Origin: Ascidiella aspersa
Lineage: Eukaryota
DNA: 64,000 nt
Assembly: GCA_963924565.1 (NCBI GenBank)
Contig: OZ004614.1
Coordinates: 11,470,001 to 11,534,000, forward strand
Reading direction: 5' to 3'
Shown here: positions 33,337 through 50,275 of the stretch, piece by piece
Numbering within the stretch: position 1 is the stretch's first letter
How the letters are laid out: every line of letters starts with the position of its first letter
The notes under the pieces: model-generated
What the model saw: the letters and a program-made list of their open reading frames with translations, nothing else
The model's database searches: none
What the model was told of the DNA's origin: nothing
Translations under genes and position numbers: made by a program

Positions 33337-33894
33337 TTATGACCTCACAATGCACTCGCTGGCTTGCAGAGGAACGGGCGAGCTCTGCCCCCCCAACATC
33401 ATTGGGGTAAAGCTGGGGTCCTGCTGGTGGTAGACCCCCTGGAATGGGTTGGTGCCGGGTGAAATTGCAGATTTGGGGGGACTCTGTGGAGTCGAAGGAA
33501 TGTATCCGCTACCGGGGTTCCTGTACAGTTCACGGGTGCTCATCACCCCATTTTGGGGGTTACTTGGGGGGCTGCTCTGGGCGGTACAGCCCCGGGCAAG
33601 CCAAGGGTGGGCAATTACCTCTTGCAGCGTGAGACGTTTGTTTTGATCTTTCTGCAGCATCGTAGCTATCAGGTGTCGACACGCGTCACTGGTCGTTGTC
33701 TGCGCGCGCTTGTGACGTAGCTCGCACGCAATAATGTCCTTCTCCTTCTGGAAGGGAACCTCGGCTTCAACCATTGTGTAAAGCAGAACTCCGAGCGACC
33801 AGGCATCGACCCGTTTGCCCATGTAGCGACGCTCAATGAACCACTCCGGGGGGTAAAATTCCGGGGTACCGGCAAACTCGGTGTACGCTGCCTC
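33337..33894 (-). CDS. PIM: Pim kinase coding exon 5 (activation segment, C-lobe, Pro/Ser-rich tail)
   Basis: tcacag|GAG GCA GCG TAC...; encodes [15 protein letters not shown]...[13 protein letters not shown]; TAA stop at 33339-33337. Confidence 0.95.
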   Translation of the reverse strand, partial: EAAYTEFAGTPEFYPPEWFIERRYMGKRVDAWSLGVLLYTMVEAEVPFQKEKDIIACELRHKRAQTTTSDACRHLIATMLQKDQNKRLTLQEVIAHPWLARGCTAQSSPPSNPQNGVMSTRELYRNPGSGYIPSTPQSPPKSAISPGTNPFQGVYHQQDPSFTPMMLGGQSSPVPLQASECIVRS

Positions 33895-36800
33895 CTGTGA
33901 GCGAAACAAATTGCTTGTTAAACTACTATTGCAGTGAATAAAGAGACCGCCTCGATAGGGGAAATTTAGTTTTACACACCCAAAACTACAGAACCGTACA
34001 TGTACAAAATAAAGTAATTAATTTTCATTTAAGTTTTAAATCTTTTTAAATCGAGAAGATCTTTCAATAGGAAAAATAAAAAGGCTTTATCTAACAAAAT
34101 TCGCTTTGTAGTCGTAATATTTATTTAAAACCGCAACCGATGTGTTTAGGGTGTTTTTTATTTGTTGGATGTCGTTGAAGTCCACTAAATTTAACCGCTC
34201 ACACTTTGTTACCTTCATAATCGTTCCGCATCCGAAATCGATGAGTTTCGCTTCGGAAGTGTGGAGGTTCAGGAGAACGTTTTCATCTTTGATGTCGCGG
34301 TGAACGACCCCGTTGTCATGGCAATGGATAACTGCTTCCACGATCTGGTGGACGTAAAAGTTACACGATTAGTTGGATACAACGATTGCCTGAAATTAAG
34401 TAATCTTTTTGCACTAATTAGTTATGCCCAGGACTATAAGGTGTCGAATTTTTTTACTTAAAATTATCGTCATACATGATAATGCCATATGGTTAAACTT
34501 TTTAACACGTGATTTTTTTAAAGCACTATTATTTTAACAGCACAATTGGGGCAGTCCTGAGAAAACAGATAACTGAGTTGTTGCTTCACATCTTTATGTT
34601 ATACGTAACGACACCGAAACACTCTTTATTCTGCTAGCAATAAAAACAGCGCCCTCGTTGCTTTATGGCGCCCAACTGGACTCTGACGTCACGCCTCGTT
34701 TCACGCCCGAACGCACAAGCACGAAGGCAAAAAGGCAAGGCGAAGAAAGACGCACCTGTCTAAAGATATTGCGGGCCACGTTTTCCGGTAGGGCGCCGTG
34801 CTGGTTCAAGTAGTCAAACAGGTCGATGACAGGCTGCGGCCGTTCCATCACTAGGATGTAGCTGTTGCGACGCTCGTACCAGTCCAACATGCCGATCACG
34901 CCTGTAGCGCACAAAAACAACAAAGGTTAGTCGCGCGTGTAAGTGGATGCCTGGGCGATGGGCGCGACGCACCACAGCGCTAAAGTGCCACCCGCGATTA
35001 ATTTTTGTAAAGGCGCAGGTGCAGCTGCTGTTGCTGCTGCTGATACTGCTGATGCTGCGAATGTTCGCCGTAGCAGTGGCTACTCCCAAACCGGGTGGGA
35101 TGAGATTGTTTTACCAAGAACCGGATCGCGTTTACTGCGGAACCGAAAAAGAAACAAGTCACGTTTATCGCGGGAAACTGCTCCTAAATCTATCGGAAAC
35201 TGGGACCGCGGACGCTTTTCAGGCTTTCGCGCCCTTGTCACGTTTTAGGGCCATTCAAACTAGAGCGCCCAACCGAAAGTGGCTGATAGCACTCTGGGAG
35301 CCCTTCGAGGACAGCTCTTTTAGGTCCAACATACGACACGGTAAGAAAGCGTCAGGCGGGAACGGCGTTTAACTCCACAGGCGTGCCTCAGCGCTCGTAA
35401 AAAGCGGTGGAATAGGTAACGCTGTAATGCGAACTGGCGGGCAGTGCGTGGGTGACGCCTCACTAATTTGCACCCGGCCGTTGTTTGAGAGCGGCCGCCA
35501 GAATCGGTTCTTGCGCCTCAGGGGATGGGCAGTTTTACAAAGCGAAAGGGAACAAATAACTCCGTCACTGCCAAAAGGCAGTAACATCGTATTTGAGGGC
35601 TTTTTTCAAACTGAAGTAGATGGTGTCAATTCAAATCAAAGTGATATATCTTTTTTAATTGCACCTTTTCTCTCTTTAAAATGCAATGGGTGAGCCGACT
35701 ATAATGTTGTAAAAGAGACTAAAAACAAAAAAACTTTTCGTTGTTACCTTTATTGCCAGACGCGGCGGCTCTGTGCAGAAGCTCAAACTCGATGGGAACA
35801 ACTCTCCCGTCCAGTTTACCCCATCGCTTCACCTTTGCTTTGGGCACCTGCTTGATGGCTACTTGCACGTTGTCAGCCTTGCGGGTTCCTGAAAGCAAAA
35901 CAGTTAAGGGTAAACAAGGGATTAAGAGCAAAAACCTAATCTGTTTTGCACGCAAAAACGAATATCAGGAAATAAGTTGTTAATAACTTGGAAGCTTGTA
36001 GCATTGAATTAAAAGAAAAATAAAGAGCGCATATGATCATCTTTCAGGTTTGTTTACTCGTGATAATTCGAGCGGTGTGGCCCGTGTGGAAAAGTCATTA
36101 ACACCGGGTTTCGTGATTGACGCAGTCCAAAGTCGCTGGGTAAAAGCAATTAACGACGCCGGCGCGGCAGTGCCAGGGCAATCAACGGGCAGCGAAACGT
36201 CCAAACGAAATCTTGAGGCGCGACAACCTTGAGTGACCCCTGGCGGCTTAGGGCGGGACGCGCCTTTCCGCGCTTTCACTCGCGAGTCCGCTGACCTCAA
36301 TAGCAAGCTGCCAGCACACAGCTACATTGATCGCTCAGCGGGCGTCGGGCGTGTGCGAAGCCTCGCGGCATTGATCACAAGTTGGCCAATCCACGGCCGA
36401 TTCAAACTTTGTTTTTTCGCGACAGATTTCGTGCGACAACATCGCGCCGTGGAGCAAAAGGTGGGGCGAAAAATTGTCAGTTAATGATATTATCATAGAG
36501 CGAGTGAACTACCAAAGGGTTCTAAATAAAAAGGAAGATAATTCAGGAAAAGGAAATCGGCCACTTTCTATTGGGGCGTGTGTTGGCCAACTGCCTGCTG
36601 TTATGCTAGTGTAGGGGGAGGGAGGGGGCAATCACTCAAACTTGCACCAGCACAAAGTCTGCTAGTTACTGTGAGCTGCTCTAGCAGGTTGAGCACCCGG
36701 CGGCTCGACATATGCTAGTGCATAAAAAGCATTGAGCCTTTTAACCACAAGTAGTTTACTATTGATTAAGATGTATTTCGTTAAACTAAGTGAACGTCAA

Positions 36801-39800
36801 CAGTGGCAAAGCAAACGCCACCAAATCCCAAGCCGATGGCCGAAACGACTGATTTTTGCACCCAGTCGCTGCAATATAGCAAATGCACACAGCTTGCTTT
36901 CTGCGGGGAACAACGCTAGGTGTATGGGAAGGGGGCTACCTAGCTCTGGCGCCATGACCCGCATTAATATTTCAACACCCCTCCGCGTCTGAAGTGTGTC
37001 AAACCGCACCGAACGAAAGCCACTAAAGTGACGCCCCAAAGCAAGCAGTTATAAACGCAAAACACAAACTGGTAAATAATAAAGAACAGCAAAACGTCGC
37101 AGTCAACACCATGTCCACTTCATAAGTTATTTTTAAAGCATTCCTATAAGATCGCATAACTGTTATCTAGCTATTAGTAATATAAACACGTCTGTTACAG
37201 TAGTTCAGCAGTGGGTTAAATATAAACACGTCTATTACAGTAGTTCAGTAGGGGGTTAAGTAAATTTTCGAAAGATCAAAAACCGTAATCCAGTCTCGTG
37301 GTTCAAGTCTCCTAGAGACAATTACAATTACCAGAGGAGCTGTTTTTGATTTATATCTCCTAGAGACCGTCAACAAAAAATAACGAAGTAATTGAAGTCA
37401 AAAAAAATATAGCGTTCTTTACGACCCAGAAATACAATTGCATCGCCAAAAACAGTTCCGACGGCATGCGTCGTTCGACGTCACAGAAGGCAGCGCAGGG
37501 ATGGCGCAGTGCACGTCAGACGAAATCTATTTTTATCGACGCGCAATGGATTTGGACCAAACGAAAAAACGGGCGTTTCTCGGGCCTTTTTTTAAGCGAA
37601 TGTAATGACGGCTTGAAACTCACTCTTGGCGTGGAGAATATAACAGGTGAGTGTATTTATGGCTATAGTGGGAAATCCAGGGGAAAATAATTATTGACAG
37701 CTAATTTTAAGATAAATTTTACACATTTTTTTTTATAAAAAAAAACACAGGGTCACAATGGGCGAGGTAAAATCATATGCTGGTGATTTACTAATATGCC
37801 TATAAATACTGAATTGTGACCTTAATTTAAACGTGATCGTAAATTTGGCAGTAGAAGGTCTATTCATACTCCTGTCAACGTTGAAAGCAGTCGAACCGCC
37901 GACATCAAATCGAACGAGAAGCAAACAACACGGGACACTTCTGGATACGGAAAATATTTGCGCGAGGGATTAAACAGTTCGTTCTAAAAATAGCGCGGGC
38001 TCGCTAACAAGCGAGAATGGCGTCGGGTGGAAAAAGCGCTCTTTGTTGTGACGTGATAATGAAGTATCGCGTTTCTACGGGGGAACGCAAGCAAGCAATG
38101 GCCAACGAATTCCTACTCGAAGGAAGACTCGCTATTTGCGAGTTGTAGAATCCTTCTGGTTAATGTAACCAAACCAACCGGGCCTTGTATAACTGTAGAG
38201 ATAATATCCCATCAGGTTAACACTATTTTAACGCTTCCTTTTAAAGGCCCATCGCTCAGCATGTATGCGTATGTTTCCAAATGTTGCGAAATGTGTTTTT
38301 GGTGTTCGCTTAATATGACGCCAGTAATGAAGGTTCGTTAAAAAATAAGTCGGCCGTGGCCCAAAAGTTCACTTTATTGCGCAACACTGTCGGAGTTTGA
38401 CCCAGTTAAATGAGTCATAGAGGCCGAAGCAGTCCGGGGTAAATCACCATTACGTGCCGCACACACGCTGTGATGTGATATCGCACTGGCGGTCGTCAAA
38501 AGGTCCTGGTTGTAAAGAGTAAGCGAGAAAGGCGGGACCAACATTAAAATAAAGTCGATCAAATTTGGACCTACACTTTAAGGTTGCAGCGGCAGAAATC
38601 TTCACTAATACATAAAATATTAGCGAAGCATTGCGAAGTGCTGTATGTTGGCTAATCCTGTTAAAGTGACAACTTCTAATGAGAATGATGCCGAGTGTGA
38701 ATTTCTGGGAAAATCACTAGGCAACACTACGCGCGTATGACTGTCACACAAAAATTCGAATCACTTAAATTTGATTGTCCTTAACCTAAAACGTGGATTG
38801 TCCTTAACCTAAAACGTCCCGGATTACAAGCGAAAATCACATGCATTTTACATAAATAGAAGGTTAGATATTAAAAGAAAAATTTTGAAGACTCGAGTTT
38901 CTTTAAACTGTGACCTATTACCTATACAGTGTGGTTTTATTACAGTCGGTGTGAACAAGTGGTTGATTACAGTACCTTGTTCGTGACACAGTAATAAATA
39001 AAGCATTAGACGTGGTTTCGGATAGATCACACACACATTACTAAGACGGCTGCCCTTTCAATATCGGTCCGATCAAGATTAGAAGGTAGGATTAGTATCA
39101 CAGTAAGACCCTGGTTGAAATTATACGTCCATCGCACCGAAGCGCGACTGGTAAACCTGGGTGATTTGGGTTGCTTTAGGTTTAGGAGGAACAATACGCC
39201 CTGAACTCTATGATTAATTTCGATTGCTGATCGATAGCTTGGTTTAAAAAAATAAACACTATTTGTTAAAAAAAAACTCGTAAAAATCGCGCCTTCAGTT
39301 ACTCGACGTATAACTACTGTATTGTGGGCGGAAAACAAATCGGATTGCACAACTCAAAAGCTACTTAGGATATGACAAAGGCAAACGGTTTGCGTGCGAG
39401 CTGGTGGTCCAATTGCTCACAGGGCGCATCCACAATTAGTGCACAGCGCCAGTCGAACGGCGCAAATTATAAATCGCAACTGGCATTTCCCGCATAATGT
39501 ATTTCCTGGTGCATTATCGCCAAACAGTTAACCCGACGACCTTCCTTGCATAGTCATGCGGCGAGTTTGTTTGCGGGTCATTTTCGCTAAACCACTGGGG
39601 CGAAATAAATTTTCAACATTGAAAGTTACTATTGGTGACTTTTGAAAGACGCTCGGATAAAACATTGCATTGGCTGAGCGCAGTCAGACAACAAAGTGAC
39701 CCAAGTGTATTTTTAACTTCCAGGGATTTGAAAACCGTCTTCAGCCTGGAGTGTTATACAATAATTAAAGCGAGTACATTGCCTTTCTAATGATGTCACC

Positions 39801-42800
39801 ACATTTAGTCCACGTAATACTTCTGTCATGAACGAGTGTGGGAAAGCGAGACCTCGCCAGCAACAGCATACCAGCTTATAACATTCGAAGAACCTTCTTC
39901 TACCATAGACGGTCGACTTTTTGCGTGTAAAAAGGGCGACTTCGACAGGAATCAAGATCCGCCGTGCGCATGGCAAGGTGGTGAATAATGTATGAGCTGG
40001 GAAGCGCGGACGTTGCGAAACCGAAGATACCGCGTCTCATGTGGCACTGGGTGCCTTTACTTCCATGCGAGGAAAGGCAAGTGCCATGCGGGAACTAGAA
40101 ACTGTTTGCTTTATAATGGACCATATGCGAGACATATACCTCTACATTACACCTTTTTTAAATTTGTAAAGAGTAGGGTGGATCGGTGCACCGGTTGAGG
40201 TCTACGAATTATTTTAGGAAAACACATTTATTATGCTATTAGCGTTTCAATAGTGTTAACTAGGGGACATCAATTGGCTGTTTAGGTTGATTTTTACATA
40301 ATTTTAATGTAAACTTTTTATTGATTGTCTCGCGATGGTTCACTCCCAAGGATACAGCGTAGACGATAAACCTTTCTACCCAAACTATCTTCACCACTAA
40401 GCTGTCACGAAATGTGAAACCGCTACATTCTGGGACGCGAGATAAGACCTGCCGAACCAAGTTATGAGACAAAGGCGGTGGCTGATTGCCGGTTGCAGGG
40501 CTATAATTACCCGTGGTAAATAAGCACGCGCGTCAATGCACTGAAGAGAAGAAGCTGACATCCGGATGCGACTGGTTAAGTAGATTGAGCGAGCTTTCTA
40601 AACTCCGCGCACAAACGAAGCCAGCGACCTCATTTTTGCCATTCGTTGCCAGGGTTGGGAAACTGCAGTGCGTCAGTGCGCATTTCAGGGATTTGTGGGA
40701 TTAGAAAGCTTAAGGAAATGAAATCGCAGCACGTTAATGACGGTCGTCACTGGCCTTGCCCGCTCAACACTTAGTGTGCTGTACGTACAGCTGAAAGAAG
40801 TGCTTGGGTGTTTTAAACCCGGTAATCATACACGCGCACTTTATAATCCCAAGAAATTCAGCAGCTCACATCATACCCTTTTTAGAAAAGTTCTCCGGTT
40901 CTTAAACATTAAGTGGTCCGCACTGGTGTGTTCATTCACAAAAAAGCACCACCTGAGAGCGAGTGTGATTTCCCCGGTAACATTCAGTTTTGCGTGAATT
41001 TGATCGATCAGGATTTCCTTTTAAACTCGTGGGAAACGCCGCAAGTTCACTTCCTGGTGTGACACGGCGGCTTTTCGTGCTTCCGCGTGTGACAACATGG
41101 TACCGCTTTCTATGGAGGAATAGAGAAAGCAGTTTCATGTTTGACAATGGACGAAATTATAATTTCGTTTTGAAATAAACCCGCTCCGGACAGCATGGCA
41201 TGAATGTTTATGATACACCTGTTTTTCACAGTTGATTGCTCGTTTCCACATTGACTAATACCTTGCGAATTTCGACATAAAGAAAGTGTTGTTTTTCTGA
41301 TCTCAATATCACGATTTCGCTCGCCTCTGTGACGAAACAATGAGGCAGCAACACAGACGCAACACGCGACAGAAAACAAAGAAACCGAAAGCGAACATCG
41401 TCAGCAACCAGGACACTTTGCTGTGTGTATATGTTGCTTCGATATCGTTCTTTAATCGTCAACGCCGCACTGTCTTCGTATAACATAACACAAAGATACA
41501 AGCGTTGAATTCAATCTAAAGCGCGTCCGATTGTCGTAAAGTTCCAAAAGAACAATTCTAATTTGTTTTTAGGTTTTACCACTCATAACCGCCAATTCGT
41601 ATAAGGCGTTCAAAGTATACGCAGTAATTTTTAGGGACGCGTCTTGGTCGCGGCAGTTTCCTGTGGCCATCGCGCGGGCGGACAAAGGATGGAAACGACG
41701 TGGCAGCGTTCCGGTCGCGTGAGCTTATGCTGCGCCGTAAACAACGAGACAGATGTGCGCGAAACAGCAGCAGTGGCGACCACGCCACGCAAGAGCAATA
41801 AAACGAGCAGCGCATCGGTGCTGTAAAGGCGATGGCGACAGCAGCGATGAATCAGAATCAGCACAAGAACCCCCAGCGCTCCGTCGCCGCAACTGCTGTT
41901 GTATCTGCTGCTGGCACGCTACGTTGACCAGGTCGAGCCTGGTACGAGCCGAAGTTGCTTTGATGAGCCGACGCTCAACAGTCGCGCGAACAAACGATAA
42001 CGCCGCTCGGGCGAAGGTAAGCGTTTTATTGCCGCCCGTGCGAGCAAACCTACGCGCGCGCGGTGCACAAGTCAGCCGTCTGGCTCCCATCCGTCCGGAT
42101 GCAGCCGCCACTTGTTGCCGCGCGGTCGTCGATCGTACGCCCTTTCTTTGTGTTTCCGAGGAGCAGTTTCGCACACGCAACAGGTAGCAGTTCGAACTAT
42201 GATACAGATTTGCCTCCCAGCGCCAAATGGCAATCAAGCAGCATTACAATTGGTCTCATGCCGAACGTTATTTACCGGGCGACCGTTTAGAGCAGTGATT
42301 CCCAAACTTTTTTTCTCGCGTACCATTTTGAGCTTCTGTACAGTGTTCATGTACCACCTAAGTTACATCCGACTAGAATATCTCAAAGTATAACTATTTT
42401 AGCATGTAGCTGTATTAAAGTTTAACAAATGTCATTCAAGGAAGACATAAAAGCCATAAATTAAACAAACAAAGCACAGCAGATAGTTCTAATGCGATAG
42501 ATGTAGTTGTTTGTTCTCCACCATCTGCTAACAATTGACGTTTTATTATCTTGAACAAGATAAGTGTTACGTCATAAACGTGCGAAATCTCAAATTAAAG
42601 GTAACTAAAACGCAACATTGCAAATTTCCCAATCTGAAAGTTTCCGGAAATTTATACAGATGCTTTAGTCGCGTACCACCTGAAAGACTCTCGCGTACCA
42701 CCGGCGGTACGCGTACCACAGTTTGGGAACCACTGGTTTAGAGAAAAGAGGCCAAACCACGCTAGGCGCAAACGATCAAACGGCTTGAAAACGTTAAGGC

Positions 42801-45800
42801 GAGTAGCTAGTTTAAAGTCCACCGGGATGAAATCGTTCGACCTTGAATGCTCTGCCGTGCTGTGGCGGCGTGCGGTTAAACGTTGCCGTCACACAGTTGT
42901 TTTTTTGCGGAGCGAGGACGTGACGTCGTACACGTTGCCTGGGGTGATGCATCACAAACGAAGAGGTGTCGCAGAAATGTGCTGGCCAGCTTCCCAACGA
43001 CGTAAAACAACAACAACAACAACCAGGGACTAACTCCCAGAGTTGCTATCTAAAGACGTTAACATTCTGTAGATAAATAGAATTCTTCTACGTGCTAGTT
43101 TGCACTTTTGCCAAAACGTTTCTGCAGTTAGAATGGCGGCAAAGGTGAAAGCAAACGTTAACCAGTAACTCTTATCAACGAGGCTAGGCGTTCAACAAGA
43201 GATCTCTAGCTGAAAGACAACAAACAAGCGCGTCGCGTAGGAAGCCGAGCAGTTGGTTTGCCTGCCAGCGCCATTTGCACCGCGGCATTCACACTAGCGG
43301 GTTTATTCTTTTCACTTGCAACAAGGGATCTTATATGGGCTTGGCGCATCCAAAGGCAGTCTGTCAAGCAGTGTCGGCGGCATTGGGCAGGCTGTGAGAC
43401 GCGAAGCAGAAGCCGGGGCCAATCGATTCCTCGAATGGGACTCGACATCTGTCTGGGCCAGCGCGCTCACCATTTCTCCCGGGAGTAATAAGAAGAGACG
43501 AGTGGGCGCGATGAGTCGAGAGAGGGGAGTGGGTACAACAACACGGGCGCGACTGGAAATGGCACGAAACCGATTCTGTCGTATCCCTTGCCCTCTCCGT
43601 CCTATTGCTGACGCCAGCAATCTGTTTTTTTCAGCACCGCCCTGGCCGACGAGGTCGTTCATCAGACGCCGTCGCGGCACACTTGCCAGTCTGACGGTTT
43701 AGCTGCCGACGCGTTCCTAACTGTTTGATCATGAAAGTCACCGCCGAATTGGGAAGTGCCGCGTTGGGGGAATACAACAGTATTATAGCACACCACAGGA
43801 AGCGCATCAACCGTGAAAACAAAACGACAAGGGTAAACAAATGCCTTTACCACACTATTATTTACCCCATTCGTATGAGAACCATTCAACGGCGCGTTGT
43901 TTAACGGCAACAGCGCTTTAAATGCCGTTGCTTTTAAGTTTCCGGCAAAATTCATTTCTCAGTCCTGTTCTTGTCCAAACAGCGAGCCGTCAATTTTCCA
44001 CTTAAAGCGACACCACAGAAAGGCCCATCGGAAACGGTCGCTGAGCTATTATTACGTCACAGTGAGGTGGCATCGCGCGTTGCTGGGTCGGAGGGCCGAG
44101 ACGAACGGTGTGCTGCGCCAAAAACGTTGTTTTGGTTTCGAACGCCAAACAATGCGTCGGCGCCCGATAAACCATCGTTCAGCGCGCCGCGTATGACAGT
44201 AACGAAGTGTTTACAAAACAAAGCGTCGCAATGCAGCAGCATCGGCATCAGCAGCAACAACGGTCCCGAGAGTTCGGGGGGCAATTGTGAATAACTGGGG
44301 GATGATTAGCCAGTCCTGCGAGCGGATGTTTTGGTTTGACCATTGGCGACGCATGAATCACCCGCTCGCTTCTAAACAGAACAAACGATGCGCAGAAATA
44401 CCCTCGCGCAAAGAATGCAATAGCGGGATTTCCGAAAGCCGGAAGTTCTAAGCAGCGAATTCGGAGCTGTGCAAGTAGTTTTTTTCTGGGGTCGATTTTG
44501 ACGAAAAATATTCTTTAAAAAAGTCCTGAATCACTGTTTCATCACAGCTGGAACGGGTGTGTGAAGGCGGGGACTGTAGTGCAAACACACGACAAGACAG
44601 CACTGGGTTTTGAACTTTGGTCTGCATGCTCGACAATAACACATTGGTGATCAGCAGCACTCGGTTTAAACGATTAATGGAGTAGGCCTAGGAATTTAGT
44701 CAAATTGGCATATCAATAAATGAACGAGTTCTTTACTTTAATTGTAATTGAAAGATGTTTTGATGCAGCGTGTTTCGATTTGGAATTCGCAAATATGTAC
44801 ATATGTTATATTATAAGGTCAAATAATGTGCCACGCAGAAGCTGTCGCATATTTTCCTCAAAAAATCGTTGTGGCCAGAATGACCCTTCGGGTTCAGGTG
44901 ACTTTGCGCTTTGATTCACGACTAACCGTAGCGTAATTTTACTTTGTATAGGCATTATCTATAAGCGTCTCACAGAAACCGGCCCAGACAAGTCCGGGCC
45001 CACCCATAACCGACCGTAGTTCCATCCGGGCGGGCGAGCACACAGCGACTAGAAAGCGTCACCGCAGCCAGCCAACAGGCGCCTGGAATGTGAAGCACGC
45101 ACCTCGTTCACAGCAGCTCTTTTGCCGGACGGAGAAATAAGAGCTGGGGCTGAAATGACCGGCACACTGCGGTGGTTTGCAGCGAATGTTAGCCGTTTTT
45201 TTTAAGGTTTTTGATGCCGAAATGGTTATTTTGCGGTTTAGGCGCCTTTGTACCAAACCCTAAAAACAACAAAGGCGGGGTTCTACAGCATACACGCCCT
45301 ACCCTTTATAAATTGCGCGCACAGCAAGGCTTCAAATGCAGTATGTTATAAAGTAAAAGCCTCTACTTAAATCAAAAGCGTCCAGCAGCAAAAAATTGGT
45401 TTTACTCTGTAAAAGATGTGATCGCACACAACTAACACAAGAGCTGACAAGGATGCCGACCGGTTCCAAGCTAAACAACAAGTGCGGAAAAGGGCGTACT
45501 GGCGTCGACTAAAACGGTGGCCTTACTGGCGTCGACAAAAACGGTGGTTCAAAGTGGCACGTGAATCGATCTCGCGGGTGCGTGGGTAAGCCAGGCACCT
45601 GGCAGGCTTAAGCAAGCACGCACCTTCCGTAACCTCGTGTACACGAGACGCGCCTCGCAAGCCAAACAAAGGAACGAGAACTGTTGGAGGCCGAGTGGGG
45701 TCGGCTGCGCGTGTTGGCCTTTGAACGGTATCCATTCGAAAACACGGGTCAAACGCCGGATACGGCAGGCACGTTGCTGCGCTCTTTTTAGTGCGTGGCG

Positions 45801-48800
45801 AATATAAAAACTTGTCACCGACTAGCTGCTGTTAAAGTAAATTGAAATTGTATTCGGGGCAAGTTCGCTCTGAGCGTCGGAAAATGCGGTTCGCTACTCT
45901 CAATAAACGTGACACGGTTTTCCCTGGCAAATCTAGCCTTGACGTCACCACGAGGCGTCACCGACCAGTTCAAATAGGCTTATTCCGCCCCACATAGTCC
46001 GCCCGTATTTAGCGTTTTGCCACGTCTGAATTGCAGGCGCGACACTCCCAGCACGGCGGAACGTTTGCCGTCGGCACACTTTCACATTTCCACACTTTCT
46101 TGCTTTGCGAGTTTGTGTCAACTTATCGCGTCTGCATTTTTGTTTTGTAGTTTTTCCCATGTGGGGCGGTATTATATGCCAAATGCGCTTTACTTTCCAC
46201 TGCGTGCAAGCTCAGACATAAATATAGAAAGCGGCTTCACTAGCTCTGTAACAAAGTTAACCCTTGGAAATGCATACACAAACCAAAACATTGTAAAATT
46301 AGCATTTGACGTTAGATACCATTCTGACAAACGCAACCTGGTCGGCAACAAACACTACCAAGAACTACTTTGCTTGTGTTTACGCGAGGGCTCTCCGTGT
46401 TTAGAGGTTCAGGCTTTCGTCCGTTGAAAGCCGTCTTTTGAGCGCTGAAGGTTGCTGGACAATTAGAAGCGCCGGGCAACGTCGGGGAACCCTCTGTTTG
46501 CTTTCGAGGTTAGGTGCTGCGCGCCGTTGTAAAGTGCTGCTTTAACCTCGTTTAATGTGCATTGAGTGGATGGTTCTGGTTTGGCAACTTGGTGTGAGCC
46601 GCTTTGTAGATGCGACGTGTCCAAAAACGGATTGCGACATTTAAAAAGGCGATTTGCATGGTGGCCCCAAGCTTTTGCTAATGCTTTTTTTAGTATGGTT
46701 CTAGCGCTAAACAAACAGCAACATAATATTTTACCAACCAGCAGCTACTCAAGGCTGTCCGCAGCTTACGATAAAAAACACAAGGTATACATTGAGACAG
46801 TCCCGTCGATAAAGTGTTGACGACATTCGAAAAAACTCGAAGCGCAGTATGAAAAAACTCCGTGGGCTGATAACAGGACAAAACCATCAGGTCGCTTGTA
46901 AAATTGGCCAATTATATGCAGCAAGGGGAAATCAAAGGAGCGCTGGAAGAGCCGATTTTGCACAGGCGCAATCAAATCATGCAATTGGAACCTTAATAAC
47001 GGTTGAAACATGGGGAGGGGTTTCTAAATATGGTTGACGCAAAACGGTCGCATGCGAACATAACAACTCTACAGAAGCTGGTAGAATTTTAATAATCGTA
47101 CTTTAATTTTGTATGTTTACAACCAGATTATGGTATTTGATAAGGCACTGCTATTCTACGTCATAAATCAACTTTGAAGATCAAATTGAATCACAAAATA
47201 TACAAAAAATAAGCAATAAACATACCTGCATAAACCGTTCCACCTCCTCCAACTCCAATAATGCCTCTGATGTCGTAAATCTTCTTAAAGGCGGAAGAGG
47301 ATCGTTGCTGTGGATCGCTGCTGACGAGGGGAGGAGCTATGCGGATAACACTGGCGGATATGGACGTTGTCGCTGGAACACTTGGATCCTCAAAGACCAC
47401 AGACGTTTGCTGTTGTTGAGAAGTAGGTTGCTCGACAGAAACTTGGATTGTGGGCTCCGGGACAGTGTTATCTTGCTTTCGACGTTGCTGACTCCTGGTG
47501 TGGTATCTGATCGGAGCGGCATCTTCTTGTGGAGCATATGGGTTGTTGTTATTGTTCTCGTCTGTGCCATTTTTCTTCGCTGTACTTCTCAAAAAATACC
47601 GCTCCCCAGTTGTCATAGGAGAAGCGAACACGGGCGATTCACTTTCTGTTGCATAGTAACAAGGTTGCTGCTGTTGATATGACATCATAGATGTGGGTAC
47701 TGGGGAAGAAGAAACAATTCTTCCCACTGGAGGTCGTCCCACTCTTTTGGTTGGTCCCTTCTTTGCTCGTCGAACATTTTTTGCGGGCTTGGAAGGAGGT
47801 GCAGCGGCAAAAGGATTAGCTTTGCTCAACGCAACATCATTAGTATTAATGACAACATCACCAAGCCGTTGCTGTGGAGGTTTGGGAGCGGGTTCCATAG
47901 AAACGAAAACAACGTCGTCGTCCTCAGCACAGTTGTCATTCTTGGATCTCTTGTGCTGATGTTGCTCTGATGCATCCCGAGAAGTCATCTGGGAGGAGTC
48001 GCACAATCTTACTCCATTAACTCCAGCTGTGACCTCACTAGTGGAGGAAGACACTCGGCAACCGGCTCCATTGTGAGAAGCGTCTTCATCCGCTCGTCGC
48101 TTTCTTGGAGAAACTCCATTGATTGATGACGAAGAGCTTAATGATGAGGAAGAATATGAAGATAGGGTTGAAGACGTTGACATGTCGGAAACTTTCTTGC
48201 TTGAAGACGAGAAGATCACTGGCTGGTGATGGGAGTAATGTACCGATGACGAAGCTTGGAATAAAGCAGGATGAATGTGGTGGTTGCTTTGGCTCACTAT
48301 GCTTCCCAGACTTCCACCGACACTACCAGCGGTCGGTGATGGAGGGGCAGATGACAATGACATCTTGCTGTCCCGGACAACGGTGCAATCACCACAAGCT
48401 CCTGTCGCACTAAATCGGTTCTTGTTCTTCAGCTCTTCGTTTGTGAAACCGAACGATGGGGATTGAACAGGATGATGACGTTGGCGGTAGTAGGCTTGTC
48501 TCCTTGCTGCCTGTTCCGAGGAAGGATTCGCTTGAACTAGCAGAGGTTGCGTAGGGGGCTGCATAGATACAGCAATCCCTGAAGGACCAGCAAACACGTT
48601 GTTGTTGTCACTGCGGCATTTTGGCACCTTATACTGCCGCTGCTCGATAGGGGTTTGAACCAAGCAGCCTTGGTAAATCGGGGCGTGCTCAACCCGCGGA
48701 GACATCAAGAGCTTCTCGTTTTCTTGATGACAGTAATCGACGTGGTTCATCGGAGCGTTGCGGTGGACAGGGACAGAAGAAGGAATTCCATTTGAGGCAA

Positions 48801-48963
48801 ACCAAATGGCATCGTGGTCGGGAACACTCAGGCAGTTGAGTGCGTTGTGGACCTGATTGGTCACCAGCTGACAAACGCCCACTGTTGAATTAGACGAGTT
48901 TGGTGAGAAGGGGCAATAGCTGACTGCACTTTGACCAAGGTGGTGAAAGTTGTCGGTGGACAT
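33337..48963 (-). CDS. PIM: Pim-family serine/threonine protein kinase with long N-terminal extension (about 904 aa, 5 coding exons)
   Basis: Exons 48963-47226, 35888-35748, 34901-34756, 34344-34213, 33894-33337. All introns are GT-AG, phases 1,1,0,0 are compatible, total 2715 nt = 905 codons. Kinase motifs: [16 protein letters not shown], Pim-specific hinge [57 protein letters not shown]. Confidence 0.95.
34213..34344 (-). CDS. PIM: Pim kinase coding exon 4 (catalytic loop, DFG)
   Basis: ccaccag|ATC GTG GAA...; encodes [11 protein letters not shown]...[11 protein letters not shown]; donor AAG|GTAAC. Confidence 0.95.
34756..34901 (-). CDS. PIM: Pim kinase coding exon 3 (hinge ERPQP)
   Basis: ctacag|GC GTG ATC...; encodes [31 protein letters not shown]...IFRQ; donor CAG|GTGCG. 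Confidence 0.95.
35748..35888 (-). CDS. PIM: Pim kinase coding exon 2 (VAIK, alphaC)
   Basis: tttgctttcag|GA ACC CGC...; encodes [37 protein letters not shown]; donor AAAG|GTAAC. Confidence 0.93.
37179..37258. repeat. 40-bp tandem duplication (x2)
   Basis: aatataaacacgtctgttacagtagttcagcagtgggtta repeated with 3 mismatches. Confidence 0.85.
38773..38817. repeat. 23-bp tandem duplication (x2)
   Basis: gattgtccttaacctaaaacgt(g) twice. Confidence 0.85.
42293..42735. mobile_element. Buster/Charlie-type MITE (443 bp) in Pim intron 1
   Basis: TIR CAGTGATTCCCAAACT / AGTTTGGGAACCACTG (15/16); perfect TSD GTTTAGAG; GCGTACC subterminal repeats. Confidence 0.92.
45497..45547. repeat. 27-bp tandem duplication (x2)
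   Basis: tactggcgtcgac(t/a)aaaacggtgg twice, separated by cct. Confidence 0.8.
47226..48963 (-). CDS. PIM: Pim kinase coding exon 1 (disordered N-terminus plus glycine-rich loop)
   Basis: 590-aa ORF whose end reads [19 protein letters not shown], followed by donor G|GTATG at 47225. Confidence 0.9.
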
Positions 48964-50103
48964 CGTGTTTGATGTGGCAGCGAGTTCACTTATTCGCTTT
49001 TAATGGGCGAAGTTCATTTCAAAGTTACGGCAAAGTAGGTTTTTAAATAAATATTTTATAAATATCTGTATAACAAAAAAGATGATGTTAAAGTTAGTCG
49101 CAAACACGCCTACAAAAAATAAGAATTTATTAATGCGACTTGTATAGCCCTTAACCCTTCCCAATGCTCAGTGCCTGGACTAAAATTTTCAACAAACAGA
49201 CCAGATCACGCAATAGCTGGTTAATCTCACTGGGTAAATGACTGGCGTATTAGGACGATTAGCATTGGAAATTATATACACCTTATATTTTTTTACAAAA
49301 AAAATCCAACTGACTGTCTGCGCTCTTTAAAACGGGGCTGAGATGCGCCTTAAAAGCATACGAACGGCAGCCGCCTTGCTTCCCTCAGACAGGCACCAGC
49401 TGCCCATCCGCGTGTCAACAATACAAGGGCCGCGGTAGAGCCGACCGGAGGGCACTTACAATAACGGGGGCCGGTAGCCTAACAACCGCCGATGCTGGTG
49501 AATGAATCACTTTTTTCACATGGCTTCTTCTAAAGGAACCAGACGCGAAAATCGCCTTTTCCGGGTTGGGTTGACCACGCCACAGCTCAAGAAACTACTG
49601 CGATTAAAACACGTAAATGTTTCCGGTTTACATTCTTGTCTACAACTGCCGCTTAAAAAACAAGTATAATGACCTACGATACTTTTGATACTTCGTACCT
49701 ACTGAGTGGGAAGACATTTATCAGCGCGACAATTTAAAGACGTAGACTTGGCGAAGTGCAGATAAGCAGTTGCTCGAGTCACCGTTGCACTGAAACTAAC
49801 AAAACAAAACAATGCAATTGAACATCTTTAACTCGTCTTGCGCAATTTTGACCTTGCTGTAGTGGCTGTTTCGAGCTCCTAATGACTCATGTCGTCTCGC
49901 TAGTACGTAAATGTACTACTTGCGTGTTGTTTACGGCTGCACTGCGGACTTCTTCTAGAAGAAAACAACACTACGCATCAACATGTGACACGAATTTGCG
50001 AAATCGGCAAACTGATTCGCTTTCGTAAATATTTCCATTTAAACTACTTGGTTTGGCAGGTTTTTCCAGCCAAACCAGATCGCAGCCACATTTTGTTGCA
50101 TAC

Positions 50104-50275
50104 CTTATCACTCTCCCTCCTGTAGCAACTGGAATGTCGTGTAAGAATCGAACAAACACGACGAACCGCGTGGTCCAAGAGAGAGAAGGTCGTACCAAGC
50201 CCGACACCGGTTGTCGTAACGGACACCGCACGCTAATGAAATAGAGAGAGAGGCTGGCGCTCGAAACGGATTGGC
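50104..50275 (-). promoter_or_regulatory. Candidate Pim promoter and non-coding first exon
   Basis: Strong donor GATAAG|GTATGC at 50104/50103; CCAATC at 50273-50268; matching acceptor ttttttgttatacag| at 49066, about 100 nt upstream of the ATG. Inference only, no transcript data. Confidence 0.4.

What the first reader, a model, noticed from the sequence alone, without database searches (positions are those of the whole stretch)
47226..48963. Pim kinase with a ~560-aa N-terminal extension carrying nuclear, SUMO-binding and chromatin-binding-like motifs
Seen: the spliced protein is about 904 aa. One 1.7-kb exon supplies a Ser/Pro/Gln-rich region containing SPRKRR and KRSK (NLS-like), EDDDVVFVS and GDVVIN (SUMO-interacting-motif-like), [15 protein letters not shown] (AT-hook-like), and two copies of RYx(L/T)RS (RYFLRS 47601-47584, RYHTRS 47508-47491). 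Established: vertebrate PIM1-3 are roughly 310-330 aa, essentially bare constitutively active kinase domains without a regulatory domain; LRS-type arginine anchors bind the nucleosome acidic patch in LANA and IL-33. Inference: this lineage may have a Pim kinase tethered to chromatin or SUMOylated nuclear bodies by its own tail, a regulatory mode I do not know from Pim kinases.
Basis: partly seen in the sequence, partly recalled or inferred. Interest (0 to 1): 0.75.

Follow-up and report, generated by a model that had tools for sequence, protein, structure and literature searches.

The report
PIM-like kinase with conserved motif tail
A sea-squirt gene encodes a PIM-type protein kinase with a long, probably floppy front section whose few strongly conserved short motifs suggest that it steers or restrains the enzyme in the nucleus, which has not been described for this kinase family.

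Summary
A minus-strand gene of five coding exons (48963-47226, 35888-35748, 34901-34756, 34344-34213, 33894-33337) encodes 904 aa. Exon 1 supplies about 555 aa of low-complexity sequence plus the kinase Gly-loop. RNA-seq reads cover exon 1 and stop at 47220. One transcript-like contig carries the exact 47226|35888 junction.

The tail is conserved in all three ascidian orders as islands in divergent sequence. The mean identity over the whole tail is 0.31. Island values are SPRKRR 0.92, KRSK 0.98, EDDDVVFVS 0.76, RYFLRS 0.86 and RYHTRS 0.91. GDVVIN (0.08) and the AT-hook GRP core (0.20) are not conserved.

- The kinase is a PIM-related paralogue, not the PIM1-3 orthologue. The same genome has a canonical PIM elsewhere, with only 32 codons of open frame ahead of its Gly-loop.
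- Long N-terminal regions are common among PIM-like kinases in the databases, but this tail family is confined to ascidian-type sequences.

Binding to chromatin or SUMO stays an untested inference. Published screens found no sequence motif that predicts binding to the nucleosome acidic patch.

The parts
47226..48963 (-). Coding exon 1: 579 codons plus 1 nt. About 555 aa of low-complexity tail followed by the start of the kinase N-lobe and the Gly-loop.
   Evidence: ORF. Start context and upstream stop. Donor. RNA-seq depth is confined to 47220-49059 within 46300-49243, and every read has its first mate on +. No Pfam family. Orthologues cover 100% of it.
48469..48501 (-). Island [12 protein letters not shown]155, Y159, R162 and H163 are identical in 13 of 13 other sequences. 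It resembles the PIM substrate pattern R-x-R-H-x-S, but has P, A, Q or Y where the acceptor would be.
   Evidence: Pimtide contacts from passages in PMC3729456.
48301..48429 (-). Islands [10 protein letters not shown] (48429-48400) and [27 protein letters not shown] (48381-48301). These are the most deeply conserved part of the tail and are probably phospho-regulated.
   Evidence: Mean identity 0.86 and 0.83. Still recognisable in the divergent P0013, P0014 and P0023.
48094..48111 (-). SPRKRR: a basic cluster resembling a nuclear localisation signal, preceded by S-P (a CDK-type S-P-x-K site).
   Evidence: Mean identity 0.92, 99th percentile of same-length windows.
47998..48036 (-). Island [13 protein letters not shown], function unknown.
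   Evidence: Mean identity 0.60; V311, V315, V318 and D322 are invariant in A1.
47899..47952 (-). KRSK(ND) basic cluster (47952-47941), then an acidic run and the V-V-F-V-S core (EDDDVVFVS, 47925-47899). This resembles a SUMO-interacting motif.
   Evidence: KRSK 0.98, EDDDVVFVS 0.76. The acidic V/I-V/I-F-V core is absent in P0009 and P0010 and altered in P0013.
47728..47772 (-). Basic cluster [15 protein letters not shown]. The basic character is conserved, but the AT-hook-like GRP core is not.
   Evidence: Mean identity 0.36, GRP core 0.20.
47584..47601 (-). RYFLRS, the first Y-x-L-R-S motif. Y, L, R and S are identical in 13 of 13 other sequences.
   Evidence: Y-x-L-R matches the PFV Gag contact residues Y537, L539 and R540 (passage).
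47491..47508 (-). RYHTRS, the second motif. Y, T and R are identical in 13 of 13 others; the leading R and the S in 12 of 13.
   Evidence: T-R-S matches CMV IE1 T485, R486 and S487 (passage).
47226..47259 (-). Kinase Gly-loop [10 protein letters not shown](G). Its last codon is split by intron 1 (phase 1).
   Evidence: Exon-1-only ORFs of other species end at the same point.
35889..47225 (-). Intron 1, 11337 nt, GTATGT...TTTCAG.
   Evidence: No RNA-seq depth in 46300-47219. The junction overhang maps to 35862-35887.
35748..35888 (-). Coding exon 2 (contains VAIK, the beta-3 lysine).
   Evidence: Collinear with P0001.
34756..34901 (-). Coding exon 3, with the PIM-type hinge [12 protein letters not shown].
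   Evidence: PIM1 is the best PDB match at 5.4e-15 and the alignment is shown. Pkinase match.
34213..34344 (-). Coding exon 4, with the catalytic loop HRDIKDEN and DFG.
   Evidence: Pkinase 4.3e-13. Boundaries.
33337..33894 (-). Coding exon 5: the C-lobe ([10 protein letters not shown]) plus a C-terminal tail of about 85 aa ending ECIVRS, then the stop.
   Evidence: Pkinase 5.6e-21. PIM1 4.5e-18, PIM2 1.7e-16, next families about 55 bits.

Best explanation
Shown: this is a real, transcribed five-exon gene for a 904-aa Ser/Thr kinase of the PIM family. It belongs to a PIM-related sister subfamily with the signature [10 protein letters not shown], not to the PIM1-3 orthologue group. Its single large first exon encodes about 555 aa with no recognisable domain and a low-confidence predicted structure. 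This tail has been kept in all three ascidian orders as an ordered string of roughly ten short conserved islands separated by freely diverging spacers.

Inferred: the tail is a regulatory and targeting module made of short linear motifs.
- The two basic clusters (S-P-R-K-R-R and K-R-S-K) most likely import the kinase into the nucleus.
- The acidic V-V-F-V element and the two basic Y-x-[L/T]-R-S elements most likely dock it on nuclear partners. Nucleosome acidic patches and SUMO-modified proteins are the best candidates, but they are unproven.
- The deepest-conserved islands, R-x-x-Y-x-x-R-H-H-[P/A] and RFSATG...KMSLSS.P.SP, most likely regulate activity or turnover.

The net effect would be a PIM-type kinase that is localised and controlled through its own polypeptide, rather than only through its abundance as described for vertebrate PIM1-3.
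For: Gene and expression:
- ORF, splice sites and the 904-aa sum.
- 28 RNA-seq reads of run X4 were laid, all in the orientation expected for a minus-strand RNA. Depth is present in 47220-49059 and absent in 46300-47219.
- A contig of run X3 has depth 76.7 over exon 1 against 13.8 in the intron. Its 26-nt overhang is the start of exon 2.

Family:
- Exons 3 and 5 match PIM1 best in the PDB.
- The orthologue P0001 scores 267 bits to PIM1, 244 to PIM2 and 127 to the next family, PASK.

Tail conservation:
- 10 hits with the tail alone, including Phallusia (975 aa), Ciona (904 aa) and Styela (945 aa). Clavelina (1019 aa) was added. Orders were checked.
- Island identities are 0.76-0.98 against a tail mean of 0.31.
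- The Y-x-[LT]-R-S pattern occurs in 19 of 77 scanned proteins with long N-termini. All 19 belong to this tail family; the pattern occurs in 0 of the other 58.
- The tail is single copy in its own genome.

Disorder:
- No Pfam family.
- 55% of residues are S/T/P/Q/N/G/A.
- The Atlas model of P0001 has mean pLDDT 0.48 and no fold match above TM 0.20 by query.

Precedents read as passages:
- PFV Gag uses Y537, L539 and the anchor R540. IE1 uses T485, R486 and S487.
- A serine lies next to the anchor arginine in most known binders.
- VRK1 is a kinase that binds the acidic patch through an arginine-rich flexible tail.
- PIM1 phosphorylates H3S10 at MYC targets.
- PIM1 has a SUMO site at I-K-D-E171, and the window keeps HRDIKDEN.
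Against: - There are no localisation, binding or activity data for any member.
- Two surveys of known acidic-patch binders found no strict sequence pattern. One states that interactors probably cannot be found by motif search.
- The acidic V-V-F-V element is missing in 2 of 13 ascidian-type sequences (P0009, P0010). Both RY motifs and this element are missing or degraded in the divergent homologues P0013 and P0023. They are therefore not the core of the tail.
- The F in V-V-F-V falls outside the stricter SIM patterns as I recall them.
- Only 28 RNA-seq reads were laid, and the junction rests on one contig of a run whose kind is not on record.
- Shorter isoforms starting at internal Met codons of exon 1 are not excluded.
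Confidence: 0.45

Rival explanations
1. The tail's main job is autoregulation, not targeting. The invariant R-H-H-[P/A] island sits in the substrate groove as a pseudosubstrate. It fits the PIM preference for R at -3 and H at -2 but has no Ser/Thr at position 0. The neighbouring Ser-rich islands are phospho-switches that release it.
For: Pimtide is ARKRRRHPSGPPTA. In it, R at -3 contacts Asp128, Asp131 and Glu171; H at -2 contacts Glu171 and Glu243; R at -5 contacts Thr134, Asp170 and Asp234 (passage; consensus peptide also).

The window's kinase keeps the equivalents of D128, D131, D170 and E171 ([12 protein letters not shown] and HRDIKDEN).

R162 and H163 are identical in 13 of 13 other sequences and H164 in 12 of 13. 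Position 0 is P, A, Q or Y and never S or T in the aligned sequences. This island and RFSATG...MSLSS are the parts that survive in the most divergent homologues.
Against: The -5 arginine is shared by only 1 of 13 other sequences; most have His. Three groove residues differ from PIM1: T134 to N, D234 to T, and E243 to Q (read from the alignment and the ORF). R.RH.[^ST] occurs by chance in 9278 of 200000 shuffles, so the case rests on conservation alone.
Confidence: 0.2
2. The conserved islands are docking and phospho-degron sites for partners unrelated to chromatin or SUMO, such as kinases, phosphatases, ubiquitin ligases or importins. They would control the stability and signalling inputs of the kinase. 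The likeness to viral chromatin tethers and to SIMs is coincidental.
For: Vertebrate PIM kinases are described as controlled mainly through synthesis and degradation (passages). The best-conserved islands are Ser/Pro-rich ([28 protein letters not shown]). No sequence pattern defines acidic-patch binders.
Against: The basic context and the exact Y-x-L-R-S and T-R-S cores, present twice and invariant, fit known arginine-anchor peptides unusually well. No alternative known motif that I could name fits them; the D-box and 14-3-3 patterns, as I recall them, do not.
Confidence: 0.25
3. This is simply the ascidian orthologue of vertebrate PIM1-3 that gained a tail.
For: PIM1 and PIM2 are the best matches among solved structures, and the PIM-type hinge ERPxP is present.
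Against: A maximum-likelihood tree of 35 kinase domains places vertebrate PIMs with a mite and a nematode PIM (support 91/89). The window's orthogroup falls in another clade with a second tunicate paralogue and unnamed sequences (support 81/85).

The same genome has a locus at G000:C4:4656492-4678059 whose exons are 62, 54, 74 and 75% identical to a mammalian PIM3. The window's exons reach 52, 58 and 42%. That locus has the TRVYSPPEW signature, and the open frame holding its Gly-loop starts 32 codons upstream.
Confidence: 0.08
4. The long tail is an annotation artefact: exon 1 is mostly 5' UTR and translation starts close to the kinase domain.
For: Internal Met codons exist in exon 1. Only 28 RNA-seq reads were available and no ribosome data.
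Against: The frame is open for 579 codons from the first ATG after a stop. Conservation is at the protein level, with invariant residues from residue 155 on and M-S at the very N-terminus, in 13 other sequences. Independent gene models in four named species have the same architecture. Of the three differences listed inside exon 1 among contigs of runs X1-X3, one is synonymous and two fall at unconserved residues. The Gly-loop lies in exon 1, so a transcript that starts in intron 1 could not encode an active kinase.
Confidence: 0.03

Closest known systems
Vertebrate PIM1, PIM2 and PIM3 kinases
   Same: The kinase domain is clearly of this family. The orthologue P0001 scores 267 and 244 bits to PIM1 and PIM2 against 127 for the next family. 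The hinge ERPxPxxDLFD is present, and the acidic residues that hold the -3 arginine of substrates are kept.
   Different: It falls in a sister subfamily ([10 protein letters not shown] in place of TRVYSPPEW). The genome has a closer canonical PIM elsewhere. The protein is 904 aa with a 555-aa conserved N-terminal region, whereas PIM1-3 are described as kinase domains without regulatory domains (passages).
PIM-1L, the 44-kDa isoform of PIM1
   Same: A PIM kinase with an N-terminal extension that is reported to change its localisation (passage).
   Different: PIM-1L arises from an upstream CUG start, is only about 10 kDa longer, is proline-rich and is reported at the plasma membrane. No sequence relation to this tail was found: the tail profile hit only ascidian-type sequences among 1.84 billion representatives.
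VRK1, a chromatin kinase that binds the nucleosome acidic patch
   Same: A Ser/Thr kinase that reaches the acidic patch through an arginine-rich flexible tail outside the kinase fold in order to act on histone H3 (abstract and passages). This is the nearest functional precedent for the proposed mechanism.
   Different: A different kinase group, a C-terminal rather than N-terminal tail, an alternating-arginine motif rather than Y-x-[L/T]-R-S, and binding shown experimentally there but not here.
Viral chromatin tethers: KSHV LANA, CMV IE1 CTD and PFV Gag CBS
   Same: Short disordered peptides with an anchor arginine. PFV Gag uses Y537, L539 and R540 (a Y-x-L-R pattern), and IE1 uses T485, R486 and S487 (a T-R-S pattern) (passages). 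The two ascidian motifs have exactly these cores, in a basic context and with the adjacent serine noted as common.
   Different: Unrelated proteins, and the likeness covers 3-4 residues. Surveys find no predictive motif, and there is no binding test here.
Other long PIM-like kinases in the databases: tunicate paralogue B of 586-648 aa, a mite protein of 753 aa, and unnamed proteins of 585-1182 aa
   Same: PIM-type kinase domain preceded by 230-640 residues of low-complexity sequence. P0043 and P0044 also carry acidic I/V-I/V-x-V elements.
   Different: Their N-terminal regions show no detectable homology to this tail. Profile comparison with P0043 aligned only 29 columns at the Gly-loop. None has the Y-x-[LT]-R-S pair.

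Membership tests
PIM kinase family (CAMK group) | The kinase domain is most similar to PIM1/PIM2 among characterised kinases. | tested here: met
   Exon 5: PIM1 69 bits, PIM2 64, next about 55. Exon 3: PIM1 58.6 bits, PIM2 43.7, next 24. Orthologue P0001: 267, 244, then 127.
PIM kinase family (CAMK group) | Atypical hinge with inserted prolines (ERPxP), as described in the review passages. | tested here: met
   The window has [13 protein letters not shown], aligned to PIM1 LERPEPVQDLFDF.
PIM1-3 orthologue group | Groups with vertebrate PIM1-3 to the exclusion of other PIM-like kinases, and is the closest PIM-like gene of its genome. | tested here: not met
   Falls in a sister clade in the tree of 35 domains, with moderate support of 81/85 and 91/89. 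The locus at G000:C4:4656492-4678059 is closer to PIM3: 54-75% per exon against 42-58%.
PIM1-3 orthologue group | Essentially a bare kinase domain without regulatory regions (passages). | tested here: not met
   904 aa, with about 555 aa before and about 85 aa after the domain.
Nucleosome acidic-patch binders (arginine anchor) | An exposed arginine in a flexible, basic segment, often with an adjacent serine and nearby hydrophobic residues. | tested here: met
   The cores Y-x-L-R-S and Y-x-T-R-S are followed by K/R-rich residues and are almost fully conserved: Y, L, R, S and Y, T, R identical in 13 of 13 other sequences, the final S of the second motif in 12 of 13. Compared with passages. This is a sequence-level likeness only.
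Nucleosome acidic-patch binders (arginine anchor) | Physical insertion of the arginine into the H2A E61/D90/E92 pocket, with binding lost on acidic-patch mutation. | not testable with these tools
The literature says motif search alone is not predictive.
SUMO-interacting motif (SIM) | A short hydrophobic core of V/I/L residues flanked by acidic or phospho-serine residues (definition recalled, not from a call). | tested here: inconclusive
   D-D-D-V-V-F-V-S fits the loose pattern and is conserved at 0.76. It has F at the third core position, is absent in P0009 and P0010, and is degraded in P0013. SUMO binding cannot be tested here.
AT-hook | A conserved R-G-R-P core in a basic context (definition recalled). 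| tested here: not met
   The window has V-G-R-P-P, not R-G-R-P. The core is 0.20 conserved, and relatives have STRPP, ASRPS or other sequences there. No Pfam family was found at E up to 1.
Classical nuclear localisation signal | A K-[K/R]-x-[K/R] type basic cluster (definition recalled), conserved among orthologues. | tested here: met
   K-R-S-K 0.98 and P-R-K-R-R 0.92-1.00. The pattern alone is common: 32223 of 200000 shuffles. Nuclear import itself was not tested.
Pseudosubstrate-regulated kinases | A segment in the same polypeptide that matches the kinase's substrate consensus but lacks the phospho-acceptor. | tested here: inconclusive
   R(-3) and H(-2) are invariant, and position 0 is never S or T. 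The R at -5 is shared by only 1 of 13 other sequences. Consensus. Occupancy of the groove was not tested.

The most novel reading that the evidence does not exclude
Ascidians carry a PIM-family kinase that targets and gates itself on chromatin. Two arginine-anchor motifs of the PFV-Gag and IE1 type (Y-x-L-R-S and Y-x-T-R-S) would clamp nucleosome acidic patches. An acidic V-V-F-V element would read SUMO, possibly SUMO on the kinase's own I-K-D-E site. An R-x-R-H-H-[P/A] pseudosubstrate would hold the kinase off until it is docked or phosphorylated. That would be the first PIM-type kinase with built-in spatial and allosteric control. It would also be a cellular counterpart of the viral chromatin tethers, joined to an H3S10-type kinase.
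Probability: 0.12. Interest if true: 0.75.

Novelty: new variant of a known kind. Interest (0 to 1): 0.55.

Why it matters
PIM kinases are textbook examples of kinases without regulatory domains, controlled by how much protein is made and degraded (passages). A sister subfamily whose members keep an ordered array of short motifs in a 555-aa tail across all three ascidian orders would show that the PIM fold has also been used with control built into the polypeptide.

The motifs give precise, cheap experiments in Ciona or Phallusia embryos: point mutants of R459 and R490, of V-V-F-V, and of R-H-H.

If the Y-x-[L/T]-R-S pair does bind the acidic patch, it would add a cellular kinase beside VRK1 to the short list of kinases that read the nucleosome surface. 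It would also connect with the known H3S10 activity of PIM1 (passages).

If it does not, the tail is still a clean natural example of motif conservation inside a disordered region.

Tried and rejected
- Pfam on exon 1 found no family at E up to 1.
- The word search with the mixed alignment A2 returned only its own first sequence, because the candidate list was swamped. It gave no taxon names.
- Profile comparison of the tail with P0043, a non-ascidian-type long PIM-like protein, aligned only 29 columns at the Gly-loop. I therefore dropped the idea that its acidic I-I-F-V and V-I-I elements are homologous to the ascidian one.
- The Atlas gave no usable feature hit and only TM 0.20 or less by query for the tail of P0001.
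- D-box, 14-3-3, PP1 (RVxF), LIR and beta-TrCP degron readings of the islands were compared by eye with patterns I recall. None fitted, and none was tested with a tool.
- AT-hook and GDVVIN are rejected as functional motifs because they are not conserved.
- I considered that P0013 and P0014 might be a paralogue. Their only match in the window's genome is this same exon 1, so they are divergent counterparts from unidentified taxa.
- Paper searches for a description of this gene found nothing relevant:
  - 'pim' + 'ascidian' + 'kinase': 217 papers, 15 listed, all about inhibitors or a facility named PIM.
  - 'Ciona' + 'Pim1': 5 papers, none with either term in its title or abstract, judged from the listing only.
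  - 'kinome' + 'Ciona' + 'PIM': 2 papers, judged unrelated from the listing only.
- Subscription journals and supplementary files were not searchable. The supplementary tables of the nucleosome interactome screen (PMC7515726) and of the SHPRH preprint could list PIM-family proteins, and I could not see them.
- The exons were never joined into one protein for a search, fold or tree. Only their lengths were summed, and database orthologues stood in for the full-length protein.

Full report
WHAT IS THERE. The minus strand carries an open frame from the ATG at 48963 to a stop at 47191. An in-frame stop lies 13 codons upstream of the ATG. The frame ends ...[21 protein letters not shown], followed by a GT donor after 47226. 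This is a kinase Gly-loop split in phase 1. The next coding piece starts behind an AG at 35888 and reads [12 protein letters not shown]. Three further exons complete a protein kinase domain. The exon coordinates are 48963-47226, 35888-35748, 34901-34756, 34344-34213 and 33894-33337. All four introns are GT..AG, and the lengths sum to 904 codons plus the stop. Each was searched on its own, and database orthologues stood in for the whole protein.

TRANSCRIPT EVIDENCE. One search for sequencing runs gave three runs of unrecorded kind and one RNA-seq run of the same species label. Reads were laid on 46300-51800.
- The RNA-seq run X4 (about 6% of it was read) gave 28 reads, all with the first mate on the + strand. 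This is what a minus-strand RNA gives in most stranded libraries.
- Depth is present in every bin from 47220 to 49059 except 48140-48323, and is zero from 46300 to 47219. Small amounts occur at 49244-49427 and 51084-51635.
- Run X3 holds a contig spanning 47225-49038 at depth 76.7, against 13.8 over the intron. It carries a 26-nt overhang at 47225. The overhang occurs once in the window, at 35862-35887, so it joins 47226 to 35888.
- Runs X1 and X2 cover the whole stretch in long contiguous contigs (one in X1, two in X2) and look like genomic DNA.
The junction therefore rests on one contig of a run whose kind is not on record, plus the sharp RNA-seq boundary.

WHICH KINASE.
- Exon 5 matches PIM1 best among all solved structures (4.5e-18), then PIM2, with the next families 13 bits lower.
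- Exon 3 matches PIM1 at 5.4e-15 and shows the PIM hinge, [12 protein letters not shown] against ERPEPVQDLFDF.
- The closest full-length relative, P0001 of Phallusia mammillata, scores 267 bits to PIM1 and 244 to PIM2. The next family, PASK, scores 127.

It is not the PIM1-3 orthologue, for two reasons.
- A maximum-likelihood tree of 35 kinase domains was built; P0082 and P0107 were dropped because my Gly-loop pattern did not find them. It puts the vertebrate PIMs with a mite and a nematode PIM (support 91/89). The window's orthogroup falls in another clade with a second tunicate paralogue and many unnamed proteins (support 81/85). Support is moderate, several branches are long, and the sample held only proteins of 497-1582 aa.
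- Searching the window's own genome with a mammalian PIM3 gave a locus at G000:C4:4656492-4678059. Its exons are 62, 54, 74 and 75% identical to PIM3, against 52, 58 and 42% for the window's exons. That locus has the canonical TRVYSPPEW signature. The open frame holding its Gly-loop starts at an ATG only 32 codons upstream; an upstream coding exon cannot be excluded.
So this ascidian has an ordinary PIM with no long extension in the open frame ahead of its Gly-loop, and in addition the long PIM-related kinase of the window.

THE TAIL IS CONSERVED AS ISLANDS. The 579-aa translation of exon 1 has no Pfam family. It did find 10 proteins:
- Phallusia mammillata, 975 aa, 50% identity over 100% of the query.
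- Ciona intestinalis LOC144742682, 904 aa.
- Styela clava, 945 aa.
- Two unnamed full-length proteins.
- Five ORFs that stop just after the Gly-loop, which means the same exon boundary.
A Clavelina lepadiformis protein of 1019 aa was added. These species cover Phlebobranchia, Stolidobranchia and Aplousobranchia.

In a 14-sequence alignment, the mean identity of the window's tail residues to the 13 others is 0.31. The islands stand out:

| Island | Mean identity |
|---|---|
| [11 protein letters not shown] | 0.71 |
| [10 protein letters not shown] | 0.86 |
| [27 protein letters not shown] | 0.83 |
| SPRKRR | 0.92 |
| [13 protein letters not shown] | 0.60 |
| KRSK | 0.98 |
| EDDDVVFVS | 0.76 |
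| RYFLRS | 0.86 |
| RYHTRS | 0.91 |
| GDVVIN | 0.08 |
| AT-hook-like stretch | 0.36 |
| GRP core of that stretch | 0.20 |

In RYFLRS the residues Y, L, R and S are identical in 13 of 13 other sequences. In RYHTRS the residues Y, T and R are identical in 13 of 13. The basic character of the AT-hook-like stretch is kept, but the GRP core is not.

Further support that this is a constrained, disordered region:
- The pair RY.[LT]RS is never reached in 200000 shuffles of the tail.
- The tail is 55% S/T/P/Q/N/G/A.
- The Atlas model of P0001 has mean pLDDT 0.48 and no fold match, consistent with disorder.
- The tail is single copy in its genome.
- Among contigs of runs X1-X3, only three differences are listed inside exon 1 (one synonymous, two at unconserved residues), against eleven in the 926 nt of intron laid. 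That table was truncated, so this is only indicative.

HOW FAR THE TAIL REACHES. A profile of six tails was searched against 1.84 billion representative proteins. It gave 26 hits at E up to 0.001.
- The strong hits are the same orthogroup.
- P0012-P0015 and P0023 (plus P0030, whose match adds a short stretch ahead of the Gly-loop) are divergent or partial tails from unidentified organisms.
- The rest match only the Gly-loop end.
No annotated protein from another phylum appeared. The divergent tails P0013, P0014 and P0023 keep R-x-x-[YF]-x-x-R-[HY]-H and K-N-K-x-[RH]-[FV]-S...V-[VF]-[RK] (the trailing ...D-x-K-x-S-L-S in P0013 and, with E for K and T for S, in P0014; P0023 has only K-V-S-F-S there). 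Only P0014 keeps D-E-D-V-I-F-V-S and Y-F-L-R-S, and none keeps R-Y-x-T-R-S. Their only match in the window's genome is this same exon.

Long N-terminal regions as such are common among PIM-like kinases:
- tunicate paralogue B, 586-648 aa;
- a mite protein, 753 aa;
- unnamed proteins, 585-1182 aa.
Of 77 such proteins scanned, Y-x-[LT]-R-S occurs in 19, all of this tail family, and in 0 of the other 58. P0043 and P0044 carry acidic I-I-F-V and V-I-I elements, but profile comparison aligned only the Gly-loop region.

READING THE MOTIFS.
(a) K-R-S-K and P-R-K-R-R are conserved basic clusters of the classical NLS type. S-P-R-K is also a CDK-type site. Both definitions are recalled.
(b) D-D-D-V-V-F-V-S has the acidic-plus-hydrophobic look of a SIM (recalled). 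PIM1 itself is SUMO-modified at the I-K-D-E171 site and degraded through RNF4 (passage), and the window keeps HRDIKDEN. A SIM in the same polypeptide could therefore act on the kinase's own modification. This is inference.
(c) Y-x-L-R-S and Y-x-T-R-S have the same cores as published contact residues. PFV Gag uses Y537, L539 and the anchor R540, and CMV IE1 uses T485, the anchor R486 and S487 (passages). A serine beside the anchor is common (passage). VRK1 shows that a kinase can use a flexible arginine-rich tail to bind the acidic patch. PIM1 is an H3S10 kinase recruited by MYC-MAX (passage). Against this, both surveys found no strict pattern. The preprint states that interactors probably cannot be found by motif search.
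(d) R-Q-R-H-H-P resembles the PIM consensus peptide ARKRRRHPSGPPTA, with R at -3, H at -2 and no acceptor. The pocket residues D128, D131, D170 and E171 are kept, while T134, D234 and E243 are not. The -5 arginine is not conserved.
(e) The Ser/Pro-rich islands look like phosphorylation clusters. No specific kinase or degron pattern that I recall fits them.

VERDICT. The gene, its expression, its family and the conservation of the tail are well supported. The best-supported mechanism is that the tail is a motif array that imports the kinase into the nucleus, docks it on nuclear partners and regulates it. I put nuclear localisation at about 0.7, acidic-patch binding at about 0.3, SUMO binding at about 0.35 and a pseudosubstrate role at about 0.2. 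These are not exclusive.

The proteins exist in public databases only as uncharacterised predictions, named 'uncharacterized protein', 'non-specific serine/threonine protein kinase' and 'STE20-like'. Three paper searches found no description; subscription journals and supplements were not covered.

As a result, the taxa of the unnamed relatives and any packing of the islands on the kinase stay open.

Noticed in passing
window 337, 15990, 19486, 24700, 27641, 34684, 45940, 56228, 57449, 63413: The perfect CRE palindrome TGACGTCA occurs 10 times in the window. Dinucleotide-preserving shuffles give a mean of 0.69, and 0 of 100 shuffles reach 10. The sites are spread over the whole window, not only the kinase gene. 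One lies in coding exon 3 and one in intron 1.
   Followed up: partly
window 25562-27395 (+): Two adjacent open frames of 142 and 424 aa. They carry a Spin-doc-type zinc finger (PF18658, 4.8e-08) and a hAT C-terminal dimerisation region (PF05699, 2e-05). This is a hAT-transposase-derived element or domesticated gene downstream of the kinase gene.
   Followed up: partly
window 49244-49427 and 51084-51635: A few RNA-seq reads of the same orientation as the kinase mRNA lie upstream of the start codon, with almost none in 49060-49243. There is a possible donor at 49230 and a possible acceptor at 49066. These may be 5' UTR exons of the same gene or an upstream transcript. Too few reads to decide.
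   Followed up: no
G000:C4:4656492-4678059 (loci L002, L003): The canonical PIM gene of this genome. Its exons are 54-75% identical to a mammalian PIM3 and it has the TRVYSPPEW signature. The ATG lies 32 codons before the Gly-loop. About 20 kb separates the exon at 4658072-4658242 from the one at 4677871-4678059.
   Followed up: partly
G000:C3:9677697-9684112 and G000:C3:6420790-6424796: Two further PIM-like loci in the same genome. The first matches the window's exon 5 at 50% identity and is probably the 586-648-aa paralogue B seen in Ciona, Phallusia, Styela and Clavelina.
   Followed up: no
window 33337-33600 (C-terminal tail of the protein): The roughly 85 residues after the kinase domain also hold conserved islands. 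G-V-M-S-T-R-E-L-Y is one. The extreme C-terminus is E-C-I-V-R-S here and in Phallusia, E-C-A-V-R-S in Ciona and E-C-I-V-I-S in Clavelina. Stolidobranch sequences end differently.
   Followed up: no
window 46300-51800: Contigs of runs X1-X3 differ from the window at many intronic and upstream positions, including an 11-nt and a 13-nt insertion, but at only three listed positions in the 1738-nt exon 1. The table was truncated, so the contrast is only indicative.
   Followed up: partly
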